From Mobula hypostoma (Eukaryota): a stretch of 64,000 nucleotides of DNA. The DNA lies in contig NC_086101.1 of assembly GCF_963921235.1 (NCBI RefSeq), forward strand, positions 140,740,001 to 140,804,000, in the 5' to 3' direction. Shown here in pieces: positions 11,040 through 46,346 of this stretch. The notes below the pieces were generated by a model, which was given only the letters and a program-made list of their open reading frames with translations, searched no databases and had not been told where the DNA came from. Position 1 is the first letter of the stretch. Each line of letters begins with the position of its first letter. Made by a program: the position numbers and the translations under genes.

Positions 11040-12485
11040 TAGATCCTTGATTTTCTCACCAGGAGACCACAGTCAGTGCTAATTGGAAGTAACACCCCTC
11101 TTCACTGTGCCTCTACTTCCTCAGGAGTCTGCGGGGATTCAGCATCCTATCAAAAACCTTGGCAAACTTCTACAGAAGTGGTTGAAAGTGTGCTGACTGG
11201 CTGCATTATGGCCTGGTATGGAAACACCAATGACTTTGAGCGGTAAATCCTACAAAAGGTAGTGGATTTGGCCCAGTACATCACAGGTAAAGGCCTCTCA
11301 ACTACTGAGCACCTCTACATGAAACGTTGCTCTCCACTCAGGCTCTTTTCTTGCTACTGCCATCAGGTAGAAGATGCAAGTGCCTCAGGACTCACCACCA
11401 GGTTCAAGAACAGTTACTATCCTTCAACCATCAGGTTCTTGAACAAAACAGGATACTTACACTCATTTAAAGATTCTTATCTTGTTATTTCATGTTCATT
11501 ATTCATACCTACATTTGCACAGTTTTCTCCTGTTTACAGTTACTGTTCTATAGATTTGCTAAGTCCATCAATGTCTTCAGCAAATCTTAGGTTTGTGATG
11601 TTTCTCCCTCCGATGCTGACATGTGTCCACATGATCTTCAAGGTCAGCCCTCTTGACAGAGCCTCCACAAAGTTTGAAATGGAAATAAGTGCTGAGAAAA
11701 CCAAGCTCATGACAAATGCCAACGGTGCCATCACAACAGACATCTCAATCCATGGTCAGAAACTTGAGACAGTGCAGCAGTTCAAATACCTGGGGGCCAT
11801 CATCAGTGATGAAGGATCAAGACCAGAAGTGCTGGCAAGAACCGCACAATGACTGCACTTTCCAAACTCAAGACAATATGGAGGGACAGCAACATCACCA
11901 TGAAGTACAAGATCAGACTCCCAGGTGCATTGGTATTCTCCATCTTCCTGTACGCATGTGAGACAAGGACCCTCACAGCAGAGCTACACAGGAAGATACA
12001 GGCATTGGAAATGAGATGCTATCGCAACATCTTGAGCATCTCATACTTGGACCACATCACAAATGAGCAGGTCCACAAGACCATCCAGCACCACATTGGC
12101 CCCCATGAAGACCTTCTCACAACGGTGAAGAAAAGAAAGCTGAGTTGGTACGGCCACGTAACAAGATCCAGTGGCCTTGCAAAGACCGTTCTACAAGGAA
12201 CTATGGAGGGGAAAAGAAAGAGAGGTAGACAGAGGAAAAGATGGATGGACAACATTAGAGAATGGACAGGGAAAACATTTGCGGTGACCCAGGCTCTGGC
12301 ACACAACCGCGACAGATGGAGCAGACTGGTGCAAAGCTTGTCATGATGGCGCCCCAACGACTCCAGCAGGAATTAAGGGCGGAAGGAAGGAAGGAGATTT
12401 GCTAAGTATGCCTGCAGGAAAAGAATCTCAAGGACAGGTATGTACTCTGATAATAAATCTTACTTTTACCTTTTCTTGAACTTTG
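11040..12485 (+). mobile_element. Rex1/Babar-type LINE 3' part, interrupted by an RTE insertion
   Basis: 'ESVLTGCIMAWYG' and 'TTRFKNSYYPSTIR' motifs. The 3'UTR resumes after the TSD at 12395 and ends in AATAAATCTTACTTT. Confidence 0.75.
11565..12394 (+). mobile_element. RTE-clade LINE, 5'-truncated with 5' inversion and 13-bp TSD
   Basis: ORF 11849..12346 (LYACET, HEDLLTTVKKRKLSWYGHV, GRQRKRW). Inverted piece 11565-~11642 encodes VSIGGRNITNLRFAEDIDGL. (GGAA)n tail. TSD AGATTTGCTAAGT at 11552-11564 and 12395-12407. Confidence 0.92.
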
Positions 12486-43222: not shown

Positions 43223-45346
43223 GGAGGTATTGCAAGAGAGAACAATACCAGAATTTAAATAAAGTGCTACACTTACAGAGAAAATGCAATGTAGGGAGAC
43301 AATAATGTGCAAGGTTATAACAAGGTATATTGTGAGATCAAAAGTTCATCTTATTATACTAGGTACCCTTTCAATCATTTTACAGCAGCAGGATAGACAC
43401 TGTTCTTGAGCCTTGTGATAAATGCTTTCAGACTTGTTTTTCTCTCCATCTTTTCTTAATTAGGAGTCACACTTGCCACCTTCCAACATGTGGGAAACGC
43501 TGCATAATTTGTAATATTTTTGGAAGTTGATAACCACCTCTATCCAAAACCTTGTAAAACCCCTGGGATGTATGTCATCGGGCGCTGGGGTTTATCACAT
43601 TCCAGTCTCATTAATCTCTCCAGTTTTTGTTTTGATAATGCTAATTTCATTCAACTCAGCATTTACGCTAGAGCTGTGACAAGAGATTAAACAAACTAGG
43701 CTTATTCCATTTGAGTTAAGTTGGTCTCACTAAAATGAACAAAATTTCTGATGGAGCTTGGCAGGATAGTTGTTACATTTCTTAGCTTTATCCAGTCTGA
43801 TTCAACTTCTTGACTTTCTTACATATAACAAACACGTTTATGATATGGTTAAGGTACACATTTCTGTCTGTTTTGCCTCTTTGTTTATTATTACAACCAT
43901 CCCTTCTTTTCTTGCATTTTGATTACCTCTTTTAAAAATTGAATATCCTGGAACATTTAACTCTCAACCTTGGCTATTTTGCAAACATGTTTCCCTAACA
44001 TGCTGTGTGTATTCAGGTAACTGGTTTACATATAGTGCCATTCTCTGCTCTTTCCTCAAATTCCAGCAATATTTCTTCTATTATTCAATTCCATTCTGAA
44101 GCCTGCCAATAAATCTTTTCATATCTATTTCAGGCAGTATGTTCTAGCTTTGCCTCACTCGTTACTTGAAAGTCCTGTTCCCCTGACTCTTTTACCAGCC
44201 AGCTTAAACACAGGAGTTTGGATTCCGAAGGAAACCTTTATTGATCTTGCTAAAGAAATTGGAATAAAAACTTGTTTATTAGCACAAAATAATTATTCTA
44301 GTGGTGTCTAATTGTTTAATTGCAAATAACACATTTTAAAGTAACTGAAAATGGCTTTCTAGAGTATAAACTGCAGTGAACCATTTAAATGTTTAATCAG
44401 TTTGCATTAGTAAGTTTCTTGGTAAATCAGCTTCTTATTGATGTGAAACAAATTCTAAAGCATGTGGCCAATTACCCATTGTATCTGTATGATGCTAGGC
44501 ATGATTTGCAGATCCTACCCTGAAGTTTTGCAATTGGCAGGATCTTGCACTGGGGGAGATGCCAGATGAGTGAGTCTGAGTGAATTTGGCTGTTATTCAC
44601 TCATGCTTAAACCTTCCACAGTTGTTGGCATTGATTTTAATTCTCCCACCCACATTATGCCTACATCAGAGGTAGAGAAGAGTGGAAACTCTACTCCCCA
44701 TGGCTTATCTCCATTAAGCTGATAATTGTGTTGGAAAACACTAAAAGCATCTATTTGTTTAAATGACTTTCACTATTTCAGACTGCAAAGGATTAGGGCA
44801 CCTAGTCAGTGATATAAGCTTGCCTATAGTTCATAGAAATGGAATTCCGAACCTGATAATGATTGGGGAGCAGTCTGATGTCTGCTTTTCACTGTCCCAG
44901 CTTCAAGAACTGTTGTCAAATATTGCCATAGCTGCTCTATACCTCGTTTTTCCAAAGTAGTTTACAAAATGTAAAAATGGAAGAAAAGCGGGCAGACTAG
45001 AATATTACAGCTGGCTTTTGCTTGCATAATTATCAAAGAAATGGAGGAATCTGCATTGACTAAAGTCAGACACAGCGATGCTTCATGCTTCATAGAGACA
45101 AATGGTTTTATAAATACATTTCTTAGTAGTTTTAAAATTTCAATGGGTTCAGAATATCCTATGAGCACAGGATAGCTTGGCTTGATGTTCTTTACAAAAA
45201 ATATTGAATACACAAAATAACTGAAGTAATGATCTTTGAACGAGAGGCAACAGCTAAAGAATAAAAATCTTCTCTCGATTACTGCGAAGATTAGTGAGGA
45301 GATCTGATAGGGTCTTTCAAGTTATGAAGAGGTTTGATAAGGGTTG

Positions 45347-45392
45347 AACTCTGCCATGGACAGTCCCAAGCCTAGCTGCGAAAGGCAGAGGG
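45347..45392 (+). ncRNA. Decayed twister ribozyme (type P1, 3' cleavage product)
   Basis: AACUCUGCC-AUGG-ACA-GUCCCAAGCC-UAG-CUGCGAAA-GGCA-GAGGG. L4 GUCCCAAGCC and GAGGG match the twister consensus, while P2 and P4 are disrupted. Confidence 0.7.
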
Positions 45393-45610
45393 TTGGACAT
45401 GGGGCTAGCAACCCCATCCCGTAGAAGCCCAGATCTACAGAATCTCCAAAGACCTCATCCTTGGGAGAGGAAGGCTCTTTGCCTAGAAGGTTTAAGATGG
45501 ACTACACCTGGGGACAACTTGAAAGACTGGCCCAGGACAGAGGCCTCTGGTGTGATGCTGATGGCAGCCTATGCCCCTATAGTGGTGATGGGCTTATGTA
45601 AAAGTAAGTT
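45347..45610 (+). mobile_element. Short non-autonomous RTE-derived element (5'UTR fused to 3' end) inserted in a CR1 remnant
   Basis: RTE-type 5' GGGTTGG...GGGGCTAGCAACCCC. 3' coding remnant TWGQLERLAQDRGLW, (AAGT)n tail, and a degenerate flanking duplication (TTGATAAGGGTTGA / TTGTTAGGATAGA). Confidence 0.75.
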
Positions 45611-45959
45611 GTTAGGATAGATACAAGAAGATGTTTCCTGTTTTGGTTACGACTAAAACCAGGGACCATAAGTATATATCCAGTGGCCACTTTATTAGGT
45701 ACAGGAGGTACTGAGTGTACAAAAGTCACTAATACTGTAAATGTATTAAAGTGTATAATTTTATCGAGAAAATGGTGGGAGTACGGAACCCACTCCTTGA
45801 GGGATTTGTGTAGTATGAAAGAAATGGATTTAAGGGGAGTTGCCTTAACACATGAGAGAGAAAGAGCTAGAAACAATGTTAGGAAATGAAGCAGTCCATG
45901 CCTACAAGCAGCAAGACTCGGACAACATTCAGGTATGTGTTTATAAGTGGTAATGGATA

Positions 45960-46346
45960 TTCATCATTATCATCAATAATATGTACCATGTCCAATGACG
46001 TGGGCAATCGTGGTCTTTGTGACCCTGGTTGTTCCCGGAAAATTTTTCTGCAGCAGTGGTTTGCCATTGCCTTCTTCTGGGCAGTGTTTTTACAAGACAG
46101 GTGACCTCAGCCATTATCAATACTCTTCAGAGATTGTCTGTCTGGTGGCAGTGGTCGCGTCACTAGAAATTGTGAATGCACCAGCTATTCACACGACCAT
46201 CCATTAACTGCTCCCACAACTTCACATGGCCCTGATAGGGGGCTTAGCAGTTATTACACCTTGCCCAAGGGTGGCCTGTAGGCTAGTGGAGGGAATGAGC
46301 GCCTAACACTGTCCTTGGTAGAGATGTATCTCCACCCCACCACCCA
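45960..46346 (-). mobile_element. RTE-related SINE-like element with (GAT)n tail
   Basis: Minus strand GAAGGCAATGGCAAACCACT (BovB/RTE-type 5'UTR motif), structured G-rich head and TGATAATGATGA tail. Confidence 0.6.

What the first reader, a model, noticed from the sequence alone, without database searches (positions are those of the whole stretch)
45347..45610. Twister-ribozyme-headed non-autonomous RTE element in a chondrichthyan-like genome
Seen: the first 46 nt of this ~260-bp element read AACUCUGCC..GUCCCAAGCC..AAA..GAGGG. They are followed by an RTE-type 5'UTR, a short RTE C-terminal remnant (TWGQLERLAQDRGLW) and an (AAGT)n tail. Known: type-P1 twisters have U|AACNCYGC...CCG-GUCCCAAGCC-CGG...AAA...GAGGG and process the 5' ends of RTE retrotransposons such as Schistosoma Perere-3. 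Inference: the element begins at the A after the scissile bond and lacks the 5' P1 strand, so it was copied from a self-cleaved RNA. That would make it a ribozyme-initiated SINE-like family that needs no Pol III promoter. This copy is probably dead, because P2 and P4 are broken, partly by CpG-type changes.
Basis: partly seen in the sequence, partly recalled or inferred. Interest (0 to 1): 0.8.

Follow-up and report, generated by a model that had tools for sequence, protein, structure and literature searches.

The report
Dead twister-headed mini RTE retroposon
This 263-base insert is an old, worn-out copy of a very abundant short jumping element made from the two ends of an RTE-type LINE. Its first base sits exactly where a twister self-cutting RNA would cut, a design already shown in blood flukes and seen here as a non-coding repeat in a vertebrate genome.

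Summary
Window 45347-45609 is one decayed copy of a repeat family of roughly 10^4 copies.

- **Ribozyme head.** The first 46-50 nt are a P3-less type-P1 twister that lacks only the 5' strand of P1.
- **5' ends.** In 30 of 31 copies found with the whole element, the unrelated flank ends exactly at the AA that follows the twister scissile bond. Target-site duplications of 7-14 nt abut that AA in 12 of 35 copies.
- **Family majority.** It has P2 = CUCC/GGAG, loop GUCCCAAGCC, AAA, GAGGG and P1-3' UUGG, letter for letter as in the tested Schistosoma Perere-3 twisters. P4 is ACG/CGG (one A.G), not CCG/CGG.
- **This copy.** It keeps all 23 core bases but has broken P2 (2 of 4 pairs) and broken P4, so it is dead.
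- **Body and tail.** They match an RTE 5'UTR, the last 34 codons of RTE ORF2 and an (AAGT)2 tail. There is no Pol III-type head.
- **Age.** The insertion is present at the same site in four related species, and copies are 70-86% alike.
- **Partner.** RTE LINEs exist here, one with a 1018-aa open frame, but the four 5' ends I could read carry a different leader. A twister-headed autonomous partner was not found.

Cleavage was not assayed. The scan has found this family several times before on other DNA of this genome.

The parts
45347..45392 (+). Twister ribozyme remnant, from the A after the scissile bond to GAGGG. AA 45347-48; P2-5' CUCU 45349-52; GCC 45353-55; P4-5' 45357-62; loop GUCCCAAGCC 45363-72; P4-3' 45373-78; AAA 45381-83; P2-3' GGCA 45384-87 (the family has GGAG); GAGGG 45388-92.
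   Evidence: Core 23/23 intact, P2 2/4 pairs, and the inner P4 pair C15-G28 lost.
45393..45396 (+). 3' strand of twister P1 (UUGG). Its 5' partner is absent because it lies upstream of the cleavage site and is not copied.
   Evidence: The same UUGG is found in the Perere-3 twisters.
45397..45493 (+). Body derived from an RTE 5'UTR, including the hairpin GGGG-CUAGCAA-CCCC at 45401-45415.
   Evidence: Alignment with the 5' ends of RTE LINE copies L099 and L101-L103.
45494..45601 (+). RTE 3' module: the last 34 codons of ORF2 (open remnant 45497-45598, MDYTWGQLERLAQDRGLW...) and the stop codon at 45599-45601.
   Evidence: The junction at 45494 is marked by loose ends.
45602..45609 (+). Microsatellite tail, (AAGT)2.
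   Evidence: Family tails are (GTAA)n or (GAA)n. GTAA repeats also end Perere-3.

Best explanation
The stretch is a dead, ancient copy of a non-autonomous, internally deleted RTE retroposon family (5'UTR joined to the last codons of ORF2 and its tail, 240-330 bp). The RNA 5' end of this family was made by self-cleavage of a P3-less type-P1 twister ribozyme encoded in its first 46-50 nt.

Proposed cycle:
1. A copy lying in a transcribed region is read through from a host promoter (inferred).
2. The twister cuts between the flank base and A1, so the RNA starts AAC... and keeps all of the ribozyme except the 5' strand of P1. This is inferred from the 5' ends and TSDs; it was not assayed.
3. An RTE reverse transcriptase recognises the shared 3' module and tail in trans (inferred from homology).
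4. Target-primed reverse transcription copies the RNA to its very end, giving full-length inserts flanked by TSDs (shown).

Each new copy gets a random upstream base and no P1, so its cutting efficiency depends on where it lands, as described for the Perere-3 T-variants.
For: - **Family size.** At least 4922 first-look candidates. One extra copy in about 330 kb of unselected flank gives an order of 10^4.
- **5' ends.** 52 of 67 BLAST matches start at base 1, and 30 of 31 whole-element hits reach the AAC, with unrelated flanks upstream.
- **TSDs.** TSDs of 7-14 nt end at the AAC in 12 of 35 copies, against 4 of 35 in a shifted control. Examples: L056 13/13, L045 12/12, L030 11/11.
- **Rfam.** The RF03160 alignment begins at model position 6 in 5'-cut mode and reaches 46.9 bits, E 3.7e-6 genome-wide, when the flank supplies P1.
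- **Family head.** The majority head (an intact example is L054:1501-1550:-) has every conserved twister base. Only the four CpG sites vary much.
- **Match to tested ribozymes.** P2 (CUCC/GGAG), L4, GAGGG and P1-3' (UUGG) are identical to the experimentally active Perere-3 twisters, which also end in GTAA repeats and have TSDs abutting the AA (PMC8501958).
- **RTE origin.** The C-terminal profile finds RTE ORF2 ends (DUF6451, RVT_1) and at least 154 RTE fragments in this genome. The RTE 5'UTR aligns with the element body.
- **Head type.** No tRNA or other Pol III-type head was found.
- **Relatives.** Four related species carry the family at very high depth, with the same boundaries, and they restore G28 and GGAG.
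Against: - No cleavage assay and no RNA 5'-end data.
- No copy reaches Rfam's gathering score of 67.2 bits, because P3 is missing and P1 is absent or accidental.
- The family P4 has only two Watson-Crick pairs next to the loop, then an A.G.
- Minimum-free-energy folding does not favour the twister helices (z about +1 for an intact head), although the pseudoknots are not modelled.
- The four full-length-like RTE 5' ends I could read (L099, L101-L103) carry a different leader of about 85 nt, with no Rfam match and no significant likeness to the twister. The autonomous partner with a twister head is therefore missing from my sample.
- All sampled copies are old (70-86% pairwise identity), so present-day activity is unlikely.
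Confidence: 0.85

Rival explanations
1. The uniform 5' end is a transcription start set by an internal promoter, as in many LINEs. The twister-like motif would then be an inactive relic or would serve another role, such as translation or RNA stability.
For: Cleavage is untested. P4 is weak and most copies lack P1 and a U at -1. A related RTE lineage does without a twister.
Against: The start coincides to the base with the twister scissile bond. The core, P2 and P1-3' are identical to ribozymes shown to cut in vitro and in vivo. The U|AA cut leaves exactly the AA seen here, next to TSDs, as in Perere-3.
Confidence: 0.08
2. It is an ordinary Pol III SINE whose head has not been recognised.
For: It is short, very abundant and nearly always full-length.
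Against: No tRNA and no 5S, 7SL or snRNA match at any threshold. The head aligns to twister-P1, and the rest is RTE 5'UTR plus the RTE 3' end.
Confidence: 0.03
3. The twister likeness of this 46-nt stretch is chance.
For: The window copy alone scores only 17.3 bits, E 0.11.
Against: The family-level match has E 3.7e-6 over 3.5 Gb. The window copy keeps 23 of 23 core bases, and the family restores its broken pairs.
Confidence: 0.01

Closest known systems
Twister variants (T-variants) at the 5' end of the Perere-3 RTE retrotransposon of Schistosoma mansoni (Liu et al. 2021, PMC8501958)
   Same: - Type-P1 twister at the very 5' end.
- The insert starts at the AA after the cut.
- TSDs abut the AA, and the upstream flank stands in for the P1 5' strand.
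- Identical P2 (CUCC/GGAG), L4, GAGGG and UUGG.
- GTAA-type repeat tail and an RTE-clade protein.
   Different: - Here the element is non-coding (5'UTR fused to the last ORF2 codons) and 240-330 bp long.
- It lies in a vertebrate genome at roughly 10^4 copies.
- The P3 stem-loop is absent.
- P4 is ACG/CGG with an A.G.
- Activity is untested.
Statement that truncated but competent twisters are conserved at the 5' end of RTE-superfamily retrotransposons (de la Pena et al. 2020, PMC7761336, cited there as 'in preparation')
   Same: The same arrangement: a twister lacking its 5' strand at the head of RTE elements.
   Different: No sequences, taxa or non-autonomous derivatives are given there, so I could not check whether this family is included.
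HDV-like ribozymes heading R2, RTE, baggins and L1Tc, and the non-autonomous NARTc (Ruminski 2011; Sanchez-Luque 2011; reviewed in PMC6765202)
   Same: A self-cleaving ribozyme frees the 5' end of a co-transcribed non-LTR element. Non-autonomous derivatives keep the ribozyme head.
   Different: A different ribozyme class. HDV-like ribozymes lie wholly downstream of the cut, whereas a type-P1 twister loses its P1 5' strand.
Rfam RF03160, type-P1 twister
   Same: All conserved loops and P2 are present, and the cleavage-site register is the same.
   Different: Below the gathering score (best 46.9 against 67.2 bits). P3 is deleted and P4 has one non-standard pair.

Membership tests
Type-P1 twister ribozyme (RF03160) | Conserved loop nucleotides: AA after the cut, GCC, GUCCCAAGCC, AAA, GAGGG | tested here: met
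   The window copy has 23 of 23. The family majority is identical.
Type-P1 twister ribozyme (RF03160) | P2 helix of 4 pairs flanking the loops | tested here: met
   The family majority is CUCC/GGAG. In the window copy only 2 of 4 pairs survive, so this copy itself fails.
Type-P1 twister ribozyme (RF03160) | P4 helix closing the GUCCCAAGCC loop (3 pairs in the Rfam model) | tested here: inconclusive
   The family has G-C, C-G, then A.G, with three further pairs possible beyond it. One variant (L042/L043) has a clean 7-pair helix. In the window copy the pair C15-G28 is lost.
Type-P1 twister ribozyme (RF03160) | P1 helix and U 5' of the scissile bond | tested here: not met
   Upstream flanks are unrelated. 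The -1 base is T 11, A 11, C 10, G 7. P1 appears only by accident (L031, L037). This is the same situation as in the active T-variants.
Type-P1 twister ribozyme (RF03160) | Score at or above Rfam's gathering threshold (67.2 bits) | tested here: not met
   No match at gathering in the window. The best in the genome is 46.9 bits.
Type-P1 twister ribozyme (RF03160) | Site-specific self-cleavage | not testable with these tools
   Needs transcription and cleavage assays or 5'-end mapping.
Ribozyme-processed RTE retroposon (Perere-3 type) | Insert begins at the ribozyme cleavage site, with the TSD directly upstream | tested here: met
   for the family. No clear TSD for the window copy.
Ribozyme-processed RTE retroposon (Perere-3 type) | RTE-clade 3' end: ORF2 C-terminus and a short-repeat tail | tested here: met
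   Tails are (AAGT)n or (GAA)n.
Ribozyme-processed RTE retroposon (Perere-3 type) | APE/RT open reading frame behind the ribozyme (autonomous element) | tested here: not met
   This family is non-coding. The RTE LINE 5' ends I read (L099, L101-L103) share the 5'UTR but not the twister. Further copies could not be fetched.
Classical SINE | Head derived from tRNA, 7SL, 5S or snRNA with an internal Pol III promoter | tested here: not met

The most novel reading that the evidence does not exclude
RTE lineages of this genome share a conserved 5'UTR (from GGAGGGUUGG and the GGGG-CUAGCAA-CCCC hairpin onward) but carry interchangeable leaders upstream of it. These are a twister (this mini-element), an unrelated leader of about 85 nt with no known family (the lineage with the 1018-aa open frame), and a third leader conserved in another species. 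That would make the 5' processing module a swappable cassette. It would also make the twister-headed mini-RTE a vertebrate retroposon class that spread to about 10^4 copies with no promoter of its own, relying only on read-through transcription and self-cleavage.
Probability: 0.35. Interest if true: 0.65.

Novelty: new member of a known kind. Interest (0 to 1): 0.45.

Why it matters
A biological role for twister ribozymes has been shown in one animal only: Schistosoma and its Perere-3 element.

- If the heads cut, this family extends that role to a vertebrate and to a short non-coding element that reached about 10^4 copies in several related species. It would then be a retroposon class that needs neither a Pol III head nor its own promoter.
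- The identical helix sequences (P2, P1-3') in a flatworm LINE and a vertebrate mini-element point to common descent or transfer of the RTE-plus-twister unit.
- About 1 in 40 copies still look intact. That would leave a few hundred potential self-cleavage sites inside host transcripts.
- For genome annotation, the family explains many isolated 'twister' hits in such genomes.

Tried and rejected
- **Rfam at gathering on the whole window:** nothing. In a 500-nt search the twister was missed until the search began at the element's first base.
- **MFE folding of heads:** uninformative, because pseudoknots are not modelled.
- **Partner search with Pfam Exo_endo_phos_2:** only an unrelated LINE family came up, with no link to this element.
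- **Partner search with the 3' module as DNA:** all eight places examined were mini-element copies.
- **Idea that the other RTE leader is a decayed twister:** MAFFT lined it up, but the local score equals that of shuffles (12 against 12.8 +/- 2.3), so I rejected it.
- **Hand-fitting that leader to an HDV-like fold:** no P3 or L3 could be placed; rejected without proof.
- **RTE copies from other assemblies (L108-L111):** no twister motif.
- **Empty-site test in four related species:** no empty site, because the insertion is present in all.
- **RNA evidence:** only assembled contigs of guessed RNA runs were on offer, and these cannot show RNA ends, so it was not pursued.

Full report
**What is there**

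- It opens with AA, CUCU, GCC, then a stem-loop carrying GUCCCAAGCC, then AAA, GGCA, GAGGG and UUGG.
- A body follows with a GGGG-CUAGCAA-CCCC hairpin.
- An open remnant at 45497-45598 encodes MDYTWGQLERLAQDRGLW..., with a stop at 45599-45601 and (AAGT)2 after it.
- No Rfam family reaches its gathering score anywhere in the window. In a 500-nt search the twister was not reported.
- When the search starts at the element's first base, so that Infernal may treat the match as cut at its 5' end, twister-P1 (RF03160) is the best match: 17.3 bits, E 0.11. For this copy alone that is weak.

**It is a repeat family, and the family settles the question**

- A search of the window's own genome (3.48 Gb) with the 264 nt gave at least 4922 first-look candidates. 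The 40 scored matches were 76-81% identical, most beginning at query base 1.
- Lined up with their flanks, 30 of 31 copies begin at the same AAC, and the sequence upstream is unrelated from copy to copy. Over all loci, 52 of 67 BLAST matches start at base 1.
- In 12 of 35 full-length copies, a 7-14-nt target-site duplication ends at the AAC and recurs after the tail. A control shifted by 200 nt gave 4 of 35. Examples are L056 13/13, L045 12/12 and L030 11/11.
- The integrated cDNA therefore ended at A1, so the template RNA began there.

**The family head is a twister**

- Scanning the genome with RF03160 returned only copies of this family as best hits. The top hit scored 46.9 bits, E 3.7e-6 for the whole genome.
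- In that copy the flank happens to supply CCAG-U opposite CUGG. The alignment then covers all 68 model positions: P1, U|AA, P2, GC, P3 deleted, P4 with one non-standard pair, the exact L4 loop, AAA and GAGGG.
- In 5'-cut mode a typical copy aligns from model position 6, the AA after the scissile bond.
- The majority letters of 60 heads show P2 = CUCC/GGAG and every conserved loop base. An intact example is L054:1501-1550:-. The only strongly variable positions are four CpG dinucleotides.
Three more pairs can follow, giving a 6-pair helix with one mismatch in place of the missing P3. One variant (L042/L043) has three changes that turn this into a clean 7-pair helix. That is a single anecdote.
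- The family's P2, L4, GAGGG and P1-3' strand are letter for letter those of the S. mansoni Perere-3 twisters, as listed in Table 1 of Liu et al. 2021. Those ribozymes cut in vitro and in reporter cells, have TSDs abutting the AA, use the flank as the P1 5' strand, and sit on an RTE element ending in GTAA repeats.
- P2 and P1 are free to vary in twisters generally (Rfam consensus). Their identity here suggests common descent of the RTE-plus-twister unit rather than convergence. This is inference.

**This copy is dead**

- It keeps 23 of 23 core bases, but P2 has only 2 of 4 pairs (positions 40-41 read CA instead of AG).
- The P4 pair C15-G28 is lost. Positions 6, 16, 27 and 28 are CpG-type changes.
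- DNA contigs of four related organisms laid on the window show, as the commonest other letters of the family, G at 45374 and AG at 45386-45387. These are exactly the letters that restore P4 and P2.
- In an unselected sample of 39 copies, only one keeps the core, P2 and the inner P4 pairs.

**RTE origin**

- A profile of the C-terminal remnant from seven copies found 189 proteins. Among them are C-terminal pieces of RTE ORF2 carrying DUF6451 or RVT_1.
- A profile of those pieces found at least 154 RTE LINE fragments in this genome. One lies in a 1018-aa open frame on contig C36.
- The 5' end of that element and of three relatives aligns with the mini-element's body from GGAGGGUUGG through the hairpin to the start codon.
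- The mini-element is therefore an internal-deletion derivative: 5'UTR plus the last codons and tail.
- Subfamilies differ in the deletion junction and in the tail, (GTAA)n or (GAA)n. The junction of the window's subfamily is at 45494.
- No tRNA or other Pol III-type head is present.

**The partner problem**

- All four RTE 5' ends I could read begin with a different leader of about 85 nt. It has no Rfam match and no significant similarity to the twister.
- A search with the 41 N-terminal residues of the C36 element found only 19 places genome-wide.
- A further RTE 5' end (L107) has a third kind of leader, which recurs in an RTE of another assembly (L108).
- A twister-headed coding RTE therefore remains unfound. 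It may be extinct, rare or simply unsampled.

**Age and spread**

- Copies are 70-86% identical to one another.
- In four related organisms, contigs bridge the element's 3' junction (about 45514-45700) with 1 to 9 differences. This insertion therefore predates their divergence.
- In those organisms the family's depth rises in the bin 45317-45363 and falls after 45598, matching the element's limits.
- One extra copy in about 330 kb of unselected flank suggests on the order of 10^4 copies, a rough figure.

**Literature**

- Liu et al. 2021 (PMC8501958) established the mechanism for the autonomous Perere-3. They mention twister-like variants in vertebrates without detail.
- de la Pena et al. 2020 (PMC7761336) state that truncated, competent twisters are conserved at the 5' end of RTE-superfamily elements, citing work in preparation.
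- A 2026 paper from that field still cites only Liu et al. for twisters and retrotransposons.
- I found no paper describing a vertebrate or non-autonomous twister-headed family. Absence from this library is not proof.
- HDV-like ribozymes heading RTE, R2 and L1Tc/NARTc are the broader precedent.

**Earlier notes of this scan**

Notes in this scan report the same family at several other places in this genome. Three of them were followed up with the same conclusion. Other notes report HDV-like heads on other RTE families. I treat these as leads, not as support.

**Verdict**

- The exceptions are that the family's P4 is weaker than assumed, cleavage is untested, and the autonomous twister-headed partner is missing.
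- It is a new member of a known kind: a ribozyme-processed RTE retroposon, here non-coding, P3-less and in a vertebrate.

Noticed in passing
L099 (G000:C36:131602100-131602800, minus strand); the ORF runs on to about C36:131599240: An RTE LINE with a 1018-aa open frame without stops. Its 5'UTR is homologous to the mini-element body, but its first 85 nt or so are a different leader, shared with L101-L103. The leader contains a GCGGUU...AACCGC stem and a GUCG...CGAC hairpin and has no Rfam match. Its role (promoter, or another ribozyme) is unknown.
   Followed up: partly
L107:300-520 (G000:C1) and L108:2540-2700 (assembly GCA_029718625.1): A third kind of RTE leader (…CCAGYUGGGAC…CUGGUCCUCCAGG…) is conserved between this genome and another assembly, upstream of the same UTR. 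Scan notes speak of HDV-like heads on RTEs in this genome; I did not test whether this is one.
   Followed up: no
Element positions 7-13 of the family head (window 45353-45359): The twister linker reads GCCAUGG, a strong Kozak context. In the family majority this AUG opens a 22-codon frame that ends in the UAA after the hairpin. In one deleted copy (L097) the frame runs through to the RTE C-terminus. This may be chance.
   Followed up: no
Window 45384-45392 and L009: Two copies share GGCAGAGGG instead of GGAGGAGGG. Together with CUCUGCC this makes a perfect 7-pair hairpin that would compete with the twister fold. It is either a small subfamily or coincidence.
   Followed up: no
L042 and L043 (G000:C91:72.67 Mb and 72.71 Mb, opposite strands): The same insertion with its flanks is present twice at 97.6% identity, about 41 kb apart, so it is an inverted segmental duplication. 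Its head has a clean 7-pair P4, but AAA is changed to GGA.
   Followed up: no
L059, the first 420 nt of the element: A twister-headed copy whose body holds at least four tandem units of about 95 nt (…GGGCUACAC…GCUACAGAAA…CUGGGAGAAGAAGGA…).
   Followed up: no
Window 45646-45739 and 46022-46162: Two other repeats just downstream have far higher depth than the mini-RTE in contigs of four related species (10^4 to 10^6 summed depth).
   Followed up: no
Window 11729-12166 (+): A LINE reverse-transcriptase fragment, 35% identical to the RTE-type protein P0005 over 150 residues.
   Followed up: no
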